From the sequence record MH383160.1: a stretch of 64,000 nt of DNA. One strand, 5' to 3'. Below, piece after piece: positions 1-64,000 of this stretch (positions within the stretch are counted from its first letter, which is position 1; each line of letters starts with the position of its first letter). The notes under the pieces are model-generated. The model was given only the letters and a program-made list of their open reading frames with translations, made no database searches and had not been told where the DNA came from. Position numbers and translations under genes: made by a program.

Positions 1-619
1 ATATAGTACTAAAACATTTGAGTACTGTCAATTAGATAATATTATATTTCTTAAAATAAAATGCGTCCTGTGTTGGTTGATACTCAATGCCATTGCCGTT
101 ATTGACTTCAACTAATAAACCTTTGTCAATAAGTTTTTTAATAGTACGATACCCTTGTTGAAAATTGGTAAAATGTGAATCATTACGAAAGGTATAACCG
201 TGCTTAACTGCTTCATCAATAGTTTTCTTTTCGATTTTAGATAATTTCATTTTGTTTCTCCCGTGTTGGTATAGATATATAATACTAAAACATTTGAGTA
301 CTGTCAACGTGATATTAGTTTTATTTTCTTATTATACTGTTGATGCTCATAAAGGTTTATCTTTCCAGTATTCTCAATTACTATTCTGTTGTTGGTGTCC
401 ACGTCGATTACACGTAGTTTCCCGTTGCTTAACTTCCTAGGCAATAGGTTACCATTAATAAACTCATTAGCAAGCTGTACGGCCTTTGTGATGATTCTCT
501 GAGGTGCTTTATAGTGTACCCGTAAGATGTTATCTTTATATAGTTGAACCTTAATCATTTTGTTTGTCCTATAAAAAAGGCGGGAACTGATCCCGCCGTG
601 TTGTTAGTACTGCAAGTTA

Positions 620-1024
620 TTAGATAACCTGGCGGCGTTTACTGTATACTGTTACACGATTACCCTTACGATCATGTCGGATCTCTTTCTGGTTGCGAAT
701 CAGTTCACTTGGACGCTTAAGGTTTGCCAGGTGATCCGCGTGAGTCCATGCGGTGTGGTTTACCTGTACTTTGATATCAGAATCAGCGATAAACTCATCT
801 TGTGCATCAAGTATTGACGCCAGTAAATCCGCTCGTTTTAGTTCTGCTGCTGTTAGTACTGGCTCCGGTGAATTCACAATATCAGAGATCTCTTTGAACT
901 GTACGGCCCAGCGTTGACCTTTCGGTGCATCTTTGCCCATGTCTTTAAATGTTTCGCCTTCCTCGCGTGCAACAATACGGGCAGCTTCACGGGTAGCGTA
1001 AAATTTAGTAATCATGGTATACAT
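620..1024 (-). CDS. Early hypothetical protein, paralogue of 12330-12596
   Basis: Shares FxATRExARIxARxxGxTFKDMG...G.RWAV and (I/K)HDRKGNRVTVYS blocks with 12330-12596. Confidence 0.8.
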   Translation of the reverse strand: MYTMITKFYATREAARIVAREEGETFKDMGKDAPKGQRWAVQFKEISDIVNSPEPVLTAAELKRADLLASILDAQDEFIADSDIKVQVNHTAWTHADHLANLKRPSELIRNQKEIRHDRKGNRVTVYSKRRQVI

Positions 1025-2086
1025 CCTATTAGTTAAGTTAGTACTACAAGTTAGAGTCTATTATAAAGTACTATCTGGGCAATGTCAAATAGTACTTTAA
1101 ATGGATTCTATTACATGTCTTTCTTACGTTTTACATCGTGGTAGCGAACTGTTATTTCTTTGTTGATCTCTTCCTCGATGCGGTGAATAACTTTTTCTTT
1201 CGGGTTGAAACCTATAACGGTTTCTTTAATGATCTCCAAGCCCGTGTATTCGCCTTGTGTACCGTAACCGTATGTAAAGGTTTCGTGTCCCAGGTCTTCC
1301 CAGCGGTCGCCAATTAACGCAGACACGTAGCAAGAGTGGTAAGTATTGCCGTGTGAATCAGTCCACCGATTAACATTAATGTCAAAGGAGGTTACAATTT
1401 TCAGTTCCACTTTCTGGGCAAGGATCATAGCCATTTTTATTTCTCTCTCTTTGTTAGGAGGGGAACCGTTTCCCCTCACTTGATGTAAACTATTATACAG
1501 TACTAAGATACTTTGTCAATACTTATTTTTTGGAAAGTTTACGCATTAATTCTACGCTTTCTTGTGAACGTTTTGCTACCTGGCAAGCTGTATGGGTAGT
1601 AAACATTTTTGTATAGTCTGACGCTTTGCCACCGAACCGAGCGGCACGTTCACGGGCACTTGGAACTAATACTATTTCTTTCTTGCAGATAGTGCACTTA
1701 GCCATTTTTATTTCTCTCTTTTAGTTAGGAGGGGAACCATTCCCCTCGCTTGATGTAAACTATTATACAGTACTAAGATACTTTGTCAATACTTAATTAT
1801 TGTAAATGTCGTGAATAGTGATAAAGTTTTTACGACCGTAAACCTGCAAATCAGTATCAATAAAGTGCTTATCTAGTACATCCTCGACGCTTAACGCGGT
1901 GTCGTGGATATCTTCGTAGAATTGAGGATCTACAATCTTGCTTAAGTCATCCGGCGTTAACTTATCATTTAACCATTGAACCGCCTGGATATCTGCTTCA
2001 CGTTTCCAGTCTTCCAGGTTAGTAGTCAGTACTTGCTCGATTTCGTTAGCTGTCAGTAGAATCCGCATTTTTATGTTTCCTTATCA

Positions 2087-2260
2087 GTGGTTGATGTAAG
2101 TATTATACTCTTTTACTTTCTATTGTCAAACTATTTTATCAGGGGAGGTTTTCTTATGTCTTACTCCTGGACTACTTAACGGGGTTACTTGTTTCGTTCC
2201 CCGTCCTGATGTAAAACATTATACTTGATTCTAAGTACAATGCAAGTACTTTTTAAAAAT
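2087..2260 (-). repeat. ~175-bp dispersed repeat (copy 1): two tandem promoters flanking an ORF-less hairpin pair
   Basis: Aligns by eye with 12046-12225 (shared ttgtcaaactattttatcaggggag, ttactcctgg, ctacttaacgggg, ccccgtcctgatgtaaaacattatac). Confidence 0.85.
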
Positions 2261-3723
2261 AGTTTTCAGTACTAGCCACCAGCATATAATAGATACATTT
2301 ATGCACCCGGTGGGCTGAATTGTTTCTATGCGTATATAATAGCAAAGGGACTGACCGGAGTCAATCCCTTTTTCAAATATTTTTAAACTTCTTTCGGGTT
2401 GCGATATGTGATAGCGTTCGGGTACATTTGTTTAATGTTATTCCATGCCTGGTTAACATTGTAACCACTTGAGCGAATCAGTTGGTTACTACCGACACCT
2501 TGAAACACTACTTCGAATAAGAATTCTTTCATGCTTTCACCTCGCGATCTGCTTTACCTTTACGCCAGGACATTACTAATTGTTCGCGTTGCCATAAGTC
2601 GAGTGATACAAAAAGTTTTGCGGTATCACTTTTAGGATACTCTCCAGTAGTACCTAACCGATAAAACAGATCTTTCAGTACTGATAATTCTACTTGAATC
2701 ATTTTATTACTCCTGATTGCGTTAATACTTCTACAATTGCATGAATGATCATAAGTACAGCTAAAACAATAATCATCGGATTCATTTGCATAAGCTGTAC
2801 TCCTTCTATTAATCTTTCAGCCAATGATCTTGAATGAATTTTTCACAGAATCCCTGTTTCATGGATTCTAACAGGCGTTCGCGGTGAGCGGCGGCATATT
2901 GCTCAGTACTATGCGTTACGCCAGGCTGATAACGTGATACCCCATCCGGTCCGATGTATTGTACATCCCACGGTTTTTCGTTAGTATCAGACCATTTACG
3001 AACGATTAGTTGACCTTGCATTTTTCTTTCCTCTCAGTGGGGAGAATCATTTCTCCCCTTCATGTAAACTATTATACAGTACTGGGTTGCATTGTCAATA
3101 GTTTTTATTCACCTTGTTTGAATTTAGTTTTCTGCATTGATTCCATGATTGCAACCAATACGCCGTGGATCTCGCTTAACGCGGAATCACTAAAAGCATT
3201 AATGAATAGTCGATCATTCTCGCGAATATTTTTAATGTACTTTTCAGCAGTAGTTGCGAATTCATTCAACGGTAGATCAAATGCTTTATCCCATGATGGA
3301 TGGCGTAATTGTAACAGTACTGGATTATCACGATCACCAGGGGAAAACGTACCAGTGATGAAACATACGCCCGGAATACTTTCGAACTGGCAACGGACTT
3401 CCTTTGTGATAGTAGTATGAATGTACATTTATTGTTATCCTCTATTAAATTAATATTACAGTTTATGAATCAATTCTTTATCTAAGCGATAGCGTACATT
3501 ATTAATAGTAACGGCATTGTTTTTAATGCTACGCTGTACAGGTCCACCAGCAATAACAAATGTTGCTTTATTGCCCCGAACAATGATAGCACTTCCAGGA
3601 TTACCGAAATCATCTTGTACTAAAATACTTGATAAGTTTTCCATTTTTTATTTCCTCTTAGTAGGGGAAGATGTTTCCCCTTGATGCAAGTACTATAACA
3701 GTACTGAAAACTAAATGCAAGTA

Positions 3724-4080
3724 CTATGATAAAATCATGATAGGATATTCACTATCGATCAGTACCTCGAATCCGAAACCTTCGTACCATTCTTTAAGAT
3801 TAAAGGCGTTATCTTCTCCCGTATCGCATTCTAAAATGATACAATCTGAATCATCGGCGGCATCAATAAAGGCATTCATTAATTCGTTACCTTCACCATT
3901 GCCCCGACTATCAGGATCAACATAAAGAGAATCAATAAACGCTACACGGTCATAATCAAGATCCGGTGCAATGATTCCACGTTTAACAAACCAGTACTGC
4001 AATTGTGCTACTTTGCCCTGTACTTGATAGCCAGTGATCTCGCCATTGTCAGTAGTACGCGTGATATGTTGTATTCCCAT
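3724..4080 (-). CDS. GNAT-family acetyltransferase
   Basis: Acetyl-CoA motif A (FIDSLYVDPDSRGNGEGNELM) and motif B (NLKEWYEGFGF). Confidence 0.85.
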   Translation of the reverse strand: MGIQHITRTTDNGEITGYQVQGKVAQLQYWFVKRGIIAPDLDYDRVAFIDSLYVDPDSRGNGEGNELMNAFIDAADDSDCIILECDTGEDNAFNLKEWYEGFGFEVLIDSEYPIMILS

Positions 4081-62702: not shown

Positions 62703-62723
62703 TTACATCTCCTAATGACGAAA

Positions 62724-63221
62724 TCAAAATCGATATACATTAATATTATCATCTGTGAAGCAATCATGGTTGTGCACATCCATGAAAGTACTAAACACTT
62801 TATCATATAAAGTTGTATGTTCTTCATGAATAGCAGCATCTAGCATGTATTCTCCACCACTTCCCATAAAGAAAGTGTAGTCTTCATGTAGATATTCAAG
62901 TTTTTTAATAAACTTTCCTTTAGTTAAAATCATATGAATAACATAATCTTTAGAAAGAAGCACACAATGGCAACTTAACTTTCTGTCAGGTATAACTGGT
63001 ACTTTATTAATTAACCAATCCAGTACTTTATCAATTTCACTTACTACCCCACTAGCACTGAATAAACGGTCATGTACATATAAAGTTTTTTGATTAACAA
63101 CTCCATATTGATATTTTGGTCTTAGTGGGAAAAAACCAAATAAGTTTCGTGGTATAGTTGACGTAACTCTAGAATCGGTAATCAATAAATTTAATCGTTT
63201 ATCAATATAAACAGTTGTCAT
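62724..63221 (-). CDS. HslV/proteasome-beta-like (Ntn) peptidase
   Basis: N-terminal M-T-T, DSRVT and GSGG.Y motifs. Confidence 0.6.
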   Translation of the reverse strand: MTTVYIDKRLNLLITDSRVTSTIPRNLFGFFPLRPKYQYGVVNQKTLYVHDRLFSASGVVSEIDKVLDWLINKVPVIPDRKLSCHCVLLSKDYVIHMILTKGKFIKKLEYLHEDYTFFMGSGGEYMLDAAIHEEHTTLYDKVFSTFMDVHNHDCFTDDNINVYRF

Positions 63222-63222
63222 A

Positions 63223-63908
63223 TTAAACCTTATCTAAGAATTTATCGTATATATAAAATTCTTTATCGGTGAATACATTAATTCTAGTATCGAATCTTTG
63301 CATTGTGTTCATATACAATGAACTTTTTAAATAAAAATACAAAGCAACAAATTCTGATATATGCATATTCTTTTTATTGTTACATAAATTCTTAAGCATT
63401 TTGATGCTATCAAATTCTTTTTCATCAAATCTGTATTGGTAAAAATTGTATCTATTGGAACGGCACTCATAGATACGAAGTGCCATTATATCAATACATG
63501 CTTTAGATTTACAGTACTTATTCAATACGTCATAATCACCCGTACATAATGCTACAAAGATTCTATGTGCGAGTGTAGCTTTGCCTTCAATCGTATAATA
63601 GCCAAAAAATTTAATGATTAAGTACTGAATGAATGTAATCATTTGATTTAGAATTTCTCCGAAATTACTAGAGTGTCATCATAATCTTCTGCAATATCAT
63701 GAAGAACTTTTAAGTTACTTTCACCAGAAACGCTTTTTACTTCGTTCAAAAGATAGTTTAGATCAACTTTAGTTACTTTTTCTGAATCAAACACACAGAA
63801 AGTTAATTCAGCGTTTGGACAGATCTTCTTCAGATTATCAGCAACAACTTGTTTGAAGTTGAAAGATGGGGAAGCAACCAGGTTAACTGCAACGAGAATA
63901 GATTTCAT
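63223..63908 (-). other. Hypothetical CDSs 63223-63642 and 63648-63908
   Basis: ORF track. Confidence 0.7.
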
Positions 63909-64000
63909 AATGTTTTCCTTTTTAGCTGATAATTAAATTAGGAGCACATTGTACTCCATATTATTTGTTATGTCAAATACTTTTAGATACCAAGTGCAGT

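What the first reader, a model, noticed from the sequence alone, without database searches (positions are those of the whole stretch)
1..64000. Palindrome AGTACT is strongly over-represented and sits inside promoters and terminators
Seen: I counted at least 15 AGTACT in the first 3 kb and about 10 in 54-57 kb, against roughly 1 per 3 kb expected from base composition (rough estimate). It overlaps -35 boxes (TTGAC-AGTACT at 1-31, 277-307, about 4125-4138, 37586-37598, 58995-59007), abuts -10 boxes (AGTACTG-TATAAT in most early cassettes), forms the array terminator hairpins, and occurs in coding DNA in several frames. Established: phages usually deplete 6-bp palindromes (this one is the ScaI site), so enrichment goes the opposite way. 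Inference: a genome-wide mark, such as the site of a phage DNA-binding, condensing or methylating protein, perhaps used to shut off early promoters or to distinguish self from host DNA.
Basis: partly seen in the sequence, partly recalled or inferred. Interest (0 to 1): 0.8.

Follow-up and report, generated by a model that had tools for sequence, protein, structure and literature searches.

The report
Selected AGTACT signal in jumbo phage
A 6-letter DNA palindrome, AGTACT, is the commonest six-letter word in this giant E. coli phage and its relatives. Selection maintains it inside genes and at fixed spots in early promoters, so some still-unknown factor must read it across the whole genome.

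Summary
The window is Escherichia phage UB (Asteriusvirus, RaK2-like jumbo phage).

- **Counts:** AGTACT occurs 260 times in 64 kb against about 21 expected, and 905 times in the 353-kb genome. It is the most frequent of all 4096 hexamers, while 23 other 6-bp palindromes are absent.
- **Not a repeat artefact:** flanks are diverse.
- **Coding DNA:** 84% of sites lie in genes, in all three frames. Counts are 3-4.5x above protein-preserving synonymous shuffles in every 25-kb bin. 53% of Ser-Thr pairs are written AGT-ACT.
- **Density:** it peaks at 6-7 sites/kb in the ~20-kb terminal repeat that carries the early genes.
- **Promoters:** 25 of 34 strong sigma-70 promoters there carry the box at fixed registers (-19..-14 and -40..-35, or overlapping the -35).
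- **Relatives:** the same registers and enrichment occur in RaK2, GAP32 and CBB. They are absent from PA5oct, rV5 and E. coli.
- **Terminators:** the motif sits next to terminator hairpins but does not form them.

The host SlmA site shares the core but its flanks do not fit. No matching methyltransferase or DNA-binding protein was identified.

Best reading: a clade-specific DNA-level signal, most likely for a dimeric phage DNA-binding protein. Two blocks beside the repeat carry only one-strand GTACT, which points to an orientation-sensitive reader.

The parts
1..64000 (.). 260 copies of the palindrome AGTACT, with weak flank rule H-AGTACT-D and TTC...GAA favoured. About 6/kb in 1-22 kb and 3.0/kb in 22-64 kb.
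   Evidence: 162 copies lie in CDS against 49 expected from synonymous shuffles.
1..15100 (.). Part of the ~20.7-kb direct terminal repeat, which spans UB 193.5-213.3 kb. It holds early small-ORF cassettes on the minus strand and 93 AGTACT (6.2/kb).
   Evidence: G17 record position 1 aligns to UB 193,510 and G17 ~20.7 kb aligns to UB ~213.3 kb. The terminal repeat is reported for G17 and Sharanji. The boundary is inferred by alignment and was not measured for UB.
10571..10603 (-). Two-box early promoter AGTAC-TTGCAA-N8-AGTACT-G-TATAAT, with boxes starting at 10598 and 10578, 20 bp apart.
9786..9818 (-). Second two-box early promoter of the same design, with boxes at 9813 and 9793.
7913..7948 (-). 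Two-box promoter AGTACT-a-TTGACA-N10-AGTACT-gg-CATAAT, with boxes at 7943 and 7921, 22 bp apart.
1060..1096 (-). Two-box promoter AGTACT-at-TTGACA-N10-AGTACT-t-TATAAT, with boxes at 1091 and 1067.
14680..14707 (-). Perfect-consensus promoter TTGACA-N9-AGTACT-G-TATAAT (box at 14687). This is the commonest register, with the box at -19..-14.
   Evidence: The same register occurs at 5806-5833, 5224-5251, 3071-3098, 1762-1789 and 1492-1519.
12974..13001 (-). Promoter with the box fused to the -35 hexamer, TTGAC-AGTACT (box at 12991). The same design occurs at 4110-4137, 279-307, 3-31, 37588 and 58997.
13437..15345 (.). Gene-free 1.9-kb stretch with 18 AGTACT, several of them as gaTTC-AGTACT-GAAtc. 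It contains the inferred right boundary of the terminal repeat.
   Evidence: No Rfam family and no tRNA.
14517..14550 (-). The only terminator-like hairpin whose stem is made of two AGTACT copies.
19867..64000 (.). Ordinary coding DNA: the RCC1-like paralogue array, then middle genes including the phage sigma factor at 61737-62702. AGTACT lies in all three frames at about 3/kb.

Best explanation
AGTACT is a selection-maintained, DNA-level recognition signal shared by the enterobacterial RaK2-like jumbo phages. A factor of that clade, not yet identified, reads it.

The most likely reader is a phage-encoded sequence-specific DNA-binding protein that binds the hexamer as a symmetric dimer.

**At early promoters.** In the strong sigma-70 promoters of the terminal repeat, boxes sit at -40..-35 and -19..-14, 20-22 bp apart and so on one face of the helix. 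Some boxes are instead fused to the -35 hexamer. Bound protein would cover the -35 and spacer and so gate or shut off early transcription.

**Across the genome.** The roughly 750 intragenic copies make the whole phage chromosome a target about 12 times denser than host DNA. The same protein could then coat or mark phage DNA genome-wide.

**Shown:**
- the enrichment;
- selection on synonymous sites and even on dipeptide content;
- the promoter registers;
- conservation across three genera;
- absence from PA5oct, rV5 and E. coli.

**Inferred:**
- that it represses;
- that it is phage-encoded.
For: - The word is an exact 6-bp palindrome. Single-mismatch neighbours are near expectation, and flank preferences are weak and symmetric.
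- Enrichment over synonymous shuffles is 2.7-4.5x in every 25-kb bin, and sites are evenly spread along gene length.
- Codon choice depends on context. TAC makes up 80% of Tyr codons in the motif context against 29% elsewhere. GTA makes up 78% of Val codons against 37% elsewhere. Ser-Thr dipeptides are 1.46x over-represented.
- 25 of 34 strong early promoters carry the box at three discrete registers.
- GAP32 and CBB promoters read aaaAGTACT-TTGACA-N10-AGTACT-t-TATAAT, although their DNA cannot otherwise be aligned with UB. RaK2 has 7 such promoters in 11 kb.
- Density is highest in the terminal repeat or early region of UB, CBB and RaK2.
- Sites are conserved at 67-68% against 47% for all hexamers at about 86% identity (p = 0.002 and 0.0004), yet they turn over. 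This fits many weak sites selected for density.
- The enrichment is absent from PA5oct (4 against 13 expected) and rV5 (9 against 9.7). It is neutral in E. coli (11 against 12.6).
Against: - No reader was found. None of the 37 unknown-function proteins scanned has a DNA-binding domain.
- The CBB HTH_37 regulator has no detectable UB homologue.
- A repressor does not obviously need 1.5-2.5 sites/kb inside late structural genes.
- A symmetric dimer cannot explain the two blocks at UB 177.3-185.0 and 188.9-193.6 kb. There only one strand carries GTACT and the other orientation is strictly absent. This is conserved in PBECO4 and Ecwhy_1 despite site turnover.
Confidence: 0.4

Rival explanations
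1. An orientation-sensitive signal. The functional unit is the asymmetric 5'-GTACT-3', read by a moving or polar machine. Candidates are a helicase-nuclease (as with Chi), a translocase (as with KOPS), or the packaging or entry apparatus. AGTACT is the most compact way to place the signal on both strands. Next to the terminal repeat only one direction is wanted, so the other is removed.
For: - Block 1 (UB 177.3-185.0 kb) has 42 GTACT on the plus strand and 0 on the minus strand. Block 2 (188.9-193.6 kb) has 1 and 7, with no palindromes.
- Both blocks are present in PBECO4 (54 of 60 positions identical).
- Both are present in Ecwhy_1 at 87% identity, with individual sites turning over but polarity kept.
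- Block-1 sites fall in all three frames and in noncoding DNA.
- Block 2 ends within about 130 bp of the left end of the terminal repeat as placed by G17.
- Host Chi sites are also clustered and oriented in the same region.
Against: - Genome-wide, one-strand GTACT is only about 1.8x enriched and balanced (440 against 394). The palindrome is 9x enriched.
- A precedes GTACT in 67% of cases, so the two orientations are coupled rather than independent.
- CBB shows no polar block and RaK2 shows only a weak skew.
- The fixed promoter registers are not predicted by this model.
Confidence: 0.2
2. A methylation site used as an epigenetic mark or switch. A phage methyltransferase modifies AGTACT. Methylation state (parental against newly replicated DNA) gates the early promoters and marks self DNA.
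For: - A palindromic 6-mer is typical of type II methyltransferases.
- Boxes overlap promoter elements, as GATC does in Dam-controlled promoters (established knowledge, e.g. IS10 and Mu mom).
- A Dam-family methyltransferase is conserved in UB, GAP32, CBB and RaK2.
Against: - Methylation does not in itself select for more sites.
- PF05869 enzymes with known specificity act on GATC (my own knowledge, not tested here). rV5 also has an annotated 177-aa DNA methyltransferase (its family was not tested here) and shows no AGTACT excess.
- The C5 enzyme of RaK2 methylates a CpG context.
- Methyltransferase content varies between members while the enrichment does not.
- This model does not explain the polar blocks.
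Confidence: 0.13
3. A preferred cleavage or binding site of the phage T4-type type II topoisomerase, or of host gyrase. A|GTAC|T gives the 4-nt stagger with symmetric flanks. Dense sites would relieve supercoiling on a 350-kb, heavily transcribed genome.
For: - The genome encodes topoisomerase II subunits.
- Sites are enriched 30-75 nt upstream of start codons and 2x in the 30 nt after stop codons. That is where transcription-driven supercoils accumulate.
- Density is highest among the strongest promoters.
Against: - Type II topoisomerases have degenerate preferences, not an exact hexamer (established knowledge).
- The fixed promoter registers and polar blocks are not predicted.
- Whether PA5oct encodes the same enzyme was not tested.
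Confidence: 0.07
4. A host protein reads it. The candidate is the nucleoid-occlusion factor SlmA, whose site GTGAGTACTCAC has the same core. Phage DNA would then activate SlmA and block cell division.
For: - The core is identical (PMC3020112).
- Sharanji-infected cells filament (PMC11895373).
- The enrichment is limited to phages of Enterobacterales among those sampled.
Against: - The conserved GT..AC flanks are not enriched. There are 82 half-sites against 102 expected and 1 full site against 2.9 expected. No exact SBS is present.
- G at -1 and C at +1 are avoided.
- rV5, another coliphage, has no enrichment.
Confidence: 0.04
5. No function. The excess is a by-product of duplicated cassettes, codon usage or mutational bias.
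For: Early cassettes are partly paralogous. The order-4 Markov O/E is only 1.24.
Against: - Flanks are unique.
- The enrichment is genome-wide and present in three genera that cannot be aligned.
- Synonymous excess is 3-4.5x in all frames, and dipeptide content is distorted.
- Site conservation is above background.
- No other palindrome is enriched.
Confidence: 0.02

Closest known systems
Mycobacteriophage L5 repressor gp71 operators and 'stoperators' (my own knowledge: Brown et al. 1997)
   Same: One short site recurs many times across a phage genome. It is found both at promoters and inside transcribed regions, so a single protein can silence globally.
   Different: - L5 sites are 13-bp and asymmetric, number about 30, and are oriented with transcription. 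They serve lysogeny.
- Here the site is a 6-bp palindrome with 905 copies, mostly inside ORFs of a lytic phage.
- No repressor has been identified here.
- The polarity of the special blocks does not follow gene direction.
Host SlmA-binding site (SBS, GTGAGTACTCAC)
   Same: Identical AGTACT core. The SBS is a palindrome bound by a dimer, scattered over a chromosome.
   Different: The flanks needed by SlmA are not enriched and are partly avoided. An SBS is 12 bp and occurs tens of times per genome.
Genome-wide over-represented oriented words: Chi (GCTGGTGG) and KOPS (GGGNAGGG)
   Same: These are short words kept at high density by selection. They serve as self or architecture signals, and their orientation matters. 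UB has strictly one-orientation GTACT blocks and also a Chi cluster near the terminal repeat.
   Different: Chi and KOPS are asymmetric and skewed genome-wide. Here the dominant form is a palindrome without global skew. No cognate machine is known.
SPO1 TF1 and phi29 p6 (phage proteins that bind along phage DNA and repress early promoters)
   Same: The proposed logic is the same: a phage protein prefers phage DNA, covers early promoters and organises the genome.
   Different: TF1 recognises hmU-DNA and p6 recognises bendability. Neither recognises an exact hexamer. No homologue was sought or found here.
Dam/GATC-controlled promoters and SeqA (E. coli, IS10, P1, Mu mom)
   Same: A short palindrome overlaps -10 or -35 elements and is read genome-wide, with pairs on one helical face.
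   Different: GATC is not over-represented. No AGTACT methyltransferase is evident in this phage.
T7 strand bias of EcoP15I sites (type III restriction evasion)
   Same: All copies of an asymmetric 5-6-bp word lie in one orientation within a stretch of phage DNA.
   Different: In T7 the word is not enriched and the bias covers the whole genome. Here the word is enriched about 13x in block 1, and the rest of the genome is full of the two-way form.

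Membership tests
SlmA-binding site (SBS) | 12-bp palindrome with conserved GT at -3/-2 and AC at +2/+3 around AGTACT | tested here: not met
   82 half-sites against 101.6 expected. 1 full site against 2.85 expected. 0 exact SBS and 1 with a single mismatch.
Restriction-modification target (ScaI/Eco255I type) | Cognate methyltransferase encoded, or the site is depleted | tested here: inconclusive
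   The site is enriched, not depleted. Only a PF05869 Dam-type and a PF00145 C5 methyltransferase were found. The RaK2 paper reports 5-methylcytosine in a CpG context. The specificity of the Dam-type enzyme is unknown.
Restriction-modification target (ScaI/Eco255I type) | The site is chemically modified in virion DNA | not testable with these tools
   Needs SMRT or nanopore calling, or ScaI digestion.
Dispersed operator / stoperator system | The same site at promoters and within transcription units | tested here: met
   25 of 34 early promoters carry it. 759 of 905 sites are intragenic.
Dispersed operator / stoperator system | An identified cognate DNA-binding repressor | tested here: not met
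   None of the 37 unknown-function proteins scanned has a DNA-binding domain. CBB_511 HTH_37 has no UB homologue. The phrog_5162 protein is excluded by rV5. Only a small part of the proteome was scanned.
Chi/KOPS-like polar word | Asymmetric word with strand skew tied to DNA ends or replication | tested here: inconclusive
   Genome-wide counts are 440 against 394, so there is no skew. Skew is absolute in two blocks beside the terminal repeat and is conserved in PBECO4 and Ecwhy_1.
Sigma-70 promoter element (extended -10 / UP-like) | Occurs only at a fixed promoter position and matches a known RNA polymerase contact (TGn at -15/-14) | tested here: not met
   The register is fixed, but the bases at -15/-14 are C and T. 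In addition, 84% of copies are in coding DNA.
Repeat or mobile-element family (REP/MITE-like cassette) | Conserved sequence extending beyond the core | tested here: not met
   Information content is about zero beyond +/-3, and 12-mers are nearly all unique.
Intrinsic terminator | The motif forms a GC-rich stem followed by a T run | tested here: not met
   1 of 22 terminator-like hairpins contains it.

The most novel reading that the evidence does not exclude
The RaK2-like phages may carry a previously undescribed genome-wide signalling word. Its unit would be the oriented pentamer GTACT. It would be written as the two-way palindrome AGTACT almost everywhere and as a strictly one-way form in blocks flanking the terminal repeat. 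An unknown polar machine would read it: entry or packaging control, a self-sparing nuclease, or fork control. The same word would double as an operator in early promoters. Selection on it is strong enough to reshape the proteome's dipeptide content.
Probability: 0.25. Interest if true: 0.9.

Novelty: new variant of a known kind. Interest (0 to 1): 0.8.

Why it matters
- Phage genomes are textbook cases of palindrome avoidance. Here one palindrome is instead the commonest hexamer of a 350-kb genome. [quoted passage not shown]
It could also show how they tell their own DNA from the host's without hypermodified bases, and how a long terminal repeat is handled at entry or packaging.
- The prediction is cheap to test. 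It gives a ScaI fingerprint, a bait sequence for pull-downs, and defined promoter boxes to mutate.
- The motif is also a practical marker for recognising members of this clade in metagenomes.

Tried and rejected
1. **Duplicated-cassette or codon-usage artefact.** Rejected by unique flanks, synonymous shuffles, dipeptide controls and the genome-wide profile.
2. **SlmA site.** Rejected by the flank test.
3. **Sequencing artefact for the AGTACT-free blocks.** Rejected because PBECO4 and Ecwhy_1 show the same pattern.
4. **Recent foreign DNA for those blocks.** Rejected because GTAC density is normal and TGTACT is 13x enriched in all frames.
5. **CBB_511 (HTH_37) and CBB_476 (PrlF-like) as readers.** Neither has a detectable homologue in UB.
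6. **The 203-aa early protein at window 11417-12028.** It is conserved in RaK2, GAP32 and CBB. It is also 59% identical in rV5-like phages, which lack the enrichment.
7. **Pfam and PHROG scans.** They covered proteins beside the sigma factor, conserved early proteins, conserved middle proteins and proteins between the two polar blocks. Nothing DNA-binding was found.
8. **Known RNA families and tRNAs in the window.** None found.
9. **Literature.** I searched AGTACT with phage and read the RaK2, CBB, Sharanji, JP4 and G17 papers. None mentions the motif.
10. **Polar blocks in CBB and RaK2.** Absent in CBB and only a weak skew in RaK2.
11. **IMG/VR scan for the promoter design.** Multi-hit, enriched loci belong only to this clade.

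Full report
**Identity of the window.** The window is identical to Escherichia phage UB (MH383160.1), positions 198148-262147. UB is an Asteriusvirus of the 121Q/PBECO4 group of RaK2-like jumbo phages, with a 353,081-bp genome.

I fetched the rest of the genome. I also fetched parts of these relatives and controls:
- RaK2, GAP32, CBB and PA5oct;
- PBECO4, Ecwhy_1, ph0011 and BF17 and G17;
- rV5 and 50 kb of E. coli K-12.

AGTACT occurs 260 times in the window, against 21.1 +/- 4.4 in dinucleotide-preserving shuffles.
- It is the most frequent of all 4096 hexamers in the window. In the genome it has 905 copies at O/E 7.6, and the next commonest hexamer has 649.
- Markov O/E falls from 12 (orders 0 and 1) to 5.9, 2.7 and 1.24 (orders 2, 3 and 4). 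This is self-absorption, because most AGTAC and GTACT pentamers are the hexamer.
- T follows AGTAC in 73% of cases, against 33-42% after the other NGTAC. The hexamer is still 5th of 4096 by z at order 4.
- In the same DNA, 23 other 6-bp palindromes with about 100 expected copies in total are absent. The genome therefore shows ordinary restriction avoidance, and AGTACT runs the other way.

**It is an exact hexamer, not a repeat family.**
- Beyond the core, only position -1 (C/T, G avoided) and position +1 (G/A, C avoided) carry information, plus a weak TTC...GAA extension.
- 12-mers are almost all unique.
- Single-mismatch neighbours are 0.6-2.3x expected, against 9x for the core.

**Selection acts on the DNA inside genes.** With a permissive ORF set, 759 of 905 sites (84%) are coding, at 2.4/kb. 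Noncoding DNA has 4.1/kb.
- Window shuffles that keep each protein and each gene's codon usage give 49.0 +/- 5.7 sites, against 162 observed. All three frames are enriched.
- Every 25-kb bin of the genome, structural modules included, has O/E 2.7-4.5. Sites are evenly spread along gene length.
- Of 718 Ser-Thr dipeptides, 383 are written AGT-ACT against 109 expected. The mirror control Thr-Ser as ACT-AGT gives 31 against 73 expected.
- TAC is 80% of Tyr codons in the motif context against 29% elsewhere. GTA is 78% of Val codons against 37% elsewhere.
- Ser-Thr itself is 1.46x over-represented while Thr-Ser is not. The signal has therefore bent protein composition.

**Promoters.** The first ~15 kb of the window holds arrays of small minus-strand ORFs, each behind a near-consensus sigma-70 promoter. 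Of 34 strong promoters in window 1-20 kb, 25 carry AGTACT at discrete registers:

| Box start relative to the -10 hexamer | Promoters | Design |
|---|---|---|
| -7 or -8 | 15 | box at about -19..-14, AGTACT-G-TATAAT |
| -27 or -28 | 7 | AGTAC-TTGCAA |
| -30 or -31 | 3 | just upstream of the -35 |
| -17 or -18 | 3 | TTGAC-AGTACT |

- Several promoters have two boxes 20-24 bp apart.
- GAP32 and CBB have no alignable DNA with UB, yet their early promoters read aaaAGTACT-TTGACA-N10-AGTACT-t-TATAAT, with boxes at -29 and -7.
- An IMG/VR scan for TTGACA-N9-11-AGTACT-N-TATAAT found multi-hit loci only in RaK2, 121Q, CBB, GAP32, one 357-kb genome and two large metagenomic contigs. All have O/E 9-23.

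**Terminators.** Only 1 of 22 terminator-like hairpins contains the motif. Sites usually lie a few bases upstream of GC-rich stems. They are 2x enriched in the first 30 nt after stop codons, 1.5-1.8x enriched 30-75 nt upstream of start codons, and depleted over ribosome-binding sites.

**Distribution over genome and clade.**
- UB density is 1.5-2.5/kb in structural and replication modules, 3-4/kb at 110-180 kb and 6-7.6/kb at 195-220 kb.
- G17 and Sharanji have a ~20.7-kb direct terminal repeat (PMC6563267 and PMC11895373). G17 position 1 aligns to UB 193,510 and ~20.7 kb aligns to UB ~213.3 kb. The densest zone is therefore the terminal repeat, and window 1 to ~15.1 kb lies in it.
- The CBB repeat (1-22,456) and the RaK2 early region (224-244 kb) are likewise densest, at 6-10/kb.
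- The enrichment is 10-18x in the first 50 kb of RaK2, GAP32 and CBB. It is absent from the Pseudomonas relative PA5oct (4 against 13.4 expected) and from rV5 (9 against 9.7). E. coli K-12 is neutral (11 against 12.6).
- Against ph0011 and BF17 (85-87% identity), 67-68% of sites are intact, compared with 47% of all hexamers (p = 0.002 and 0.0004). Gains and losses occur on both sides. This fits many weakly selected sites kept at a set density.

**An unexpected clue outside the window.** Two stretches just left of the terminal repeat have no AGTACT at all: UB 177,297-185,013 and 188,896-193,641.
- They are not motif-poor. Block 1 has 40 TGTACT, 12 TGTACC and 8 TGTACA, and never A before GTAC. 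Block 2 shows the mirror image, AGTACA.
- In block 1 the pentamer GTACT therefore sits only on the plus strand (42 against 0). In block 2 it sits almost only on the minus strand (1 against 7).
- The sites are in all frames and in noncoding DNA.
- PBECO4 has the same bases at 54 of 60 and 7 of 7 positions.
- Ecwhy_1, at 87% identity, keeps both blocks (0 palindromes, 46 plus-only, 0 minus-only; then 0, 1, 8), although a third of individual sites differ. The polarity is therefore maintained by selection.
- Block 2 ends within about 130 bp of the repeat's left end. Genes run the same way in both blocks, so polarity does not follow transcription.
- CBB has no such block, and RaK2 has only a weak skew just past its early region.

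- *SlmA.* Its site GTGAGTACTCAC shares the core (PMC3020112). It is excluded by the flanks, with 82 half-sites against 102 expected.
- *Methyltransferases.* The only ones found are a Dam-family enzyme and a C5 enzyme. The RaK2 paper reports 5-methylcytosine in a CpG context, and AGTACT has no CpG.
- *CBB regulators.* The CBB regulator (HTH_37) and its PrlF-like protein have no UB homologue.
- *Conserved early protein.* The only early protein conserved in all three genera, at window 11417-12028, is also in rV5-like phages, which lack the enrichment.
- *Domain scans.* Pfam scans of 37 proteins of unknown function, with PHROG scans of 10 of them, gave no DNA-binding domain.

**Interpretation.** The shown facts require a DNA-level reader specific to this clade.
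- The exact palindrome, the symmetric flanks, the paired boxes on one helical face and the overlap with the -35 and spacer favour a dimeric DNA-binding protein. It would gate early promoters and, through about 750 intragenic sites at 12x host density, mark or coat phage DNA. I give this a confidence of 0.4.
- The polar blocks show that at least one reader distinguishes orientation. This keeps alive a Chi/KOPS-like or entry/packaging signal in which AGTACT is the two-way form (0.2).
- Methylation (0.13), a topoisomerase site (0.07), a host factor (0.04) and no function (0.02) follow.
- None of the papers I searched or read mentions the motif. As far as that search goes, it is undescribed.

Noticed in passing
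Outside the window: UB genome 177,297-185,013 and 188,896-193,641 (L006 27297-35013 and 38896-43641), 4.5-21 kb left of window position 1: Two AGTACT-free blocks in which the motif exists only as one-strand GTACT. Block 1 has TGTACT x40 and never AGTAC. Block 2 has the mirror form AGTACA. Both are conserved in PBECO4 and Ecwhy_1 with site turnover. Block 2 ends at the left end of the terminal repeat.
   Followed up: yes
Window 2276, 3544, 5007, 8566, 13627, 14476, 44246, 61498 (minus strand); 14488, 24896, 25151, 25409 (plus strand): Host Chi sites (GCTGGTGG) are far over-represented. The genome has 9 on the plus strand and 16 on the minus strand, against about 0.7 expected per strand. Nine minus-strand copies cluster in UB 194.8-212.6 kb, the terminal repeat. 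This is possibly protection of the entering end from RecBCD.
   Followed up: partly
Window 13437-15345: A gene-free 1.9-kb stretch containing the inferred right boundary of the terminal repeat (~15.1 kb). It holds several strong promoters and hairpins, and three iteron-like direct repeats ACGGCTARA / GGCTAAACGGCTAGA at 14166-14260 on the minus strand. It has no Rfam family and no tRNA. It may be an origin or a non-coding RNA locus.
   Followed up: partly
Window 2292, 4649, 6313, 12245, 13802 (minus strand): A recurrent ~18-25-nt element, (CCCAYAG)GGTGCRNRWRTGTAWC, found downstream of some early promoters or cassettes. Its function is unknown.
   Followed up: no
Window 3039, 5775, 6210, 6794, 8122 and similar (minus strand): A conserved GC-rich leader hairpin, GGGGAGAA-N-TTCTCCCC, lies between the promoter and the ribosome-binding site of many early cassettes.
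   Followed up: no
Window 15346-19746 (minus strand) and 304-558, 12330-12918, 63223-63642: The GenBank record leaves about 25 tightly packed small ORFs unannotated. The ORF at 304-558 has a ParE-like toxin domain (PF24732, E = 6e-11) and is conserved in GAP32 and CBB.
   Followed up: partly
Whole window: 23 six-bp palindromes have zero copies against about 100 expected in total. Examples are GGTACC, CCATGG, GCATGC, CAGCTG, TGGCCA and GGATCC. This is strong restriction-site avoidance, implying DNA that restriction enzymes can access.
   Followed up: partly
Window 19867-34075 (plus strand): An array of about 14 tandem RCC1-repeat paralogues, annotated as 'DNA condensation protein' or 'regulator of chromosome condensation'. 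It abuts the early region. In CBB, kelch-like structural proteins occupy the corresponding position next to the repeat.
   Followed up: no
Whole UB proteome: The dipeptides Ser-Thr (718 against 492 expected), Val-Leu (757 against 553) and Gln-Tyr (294 against 195) are over-represented. These are the translations of AGTACT in the three frames. Thr-Ser is not over-represented.
   Followed up: yes
RaK2 248-252 kb (L142/L143): Just past the dense early region, RaK2 shows a weak strand skew of one-strand GTACT: 5 palindromes, 5 plus-only and 19 minus-only. This may be a faint counterpart of the Asteriusvirus polar blocks.
   Followed up: partly
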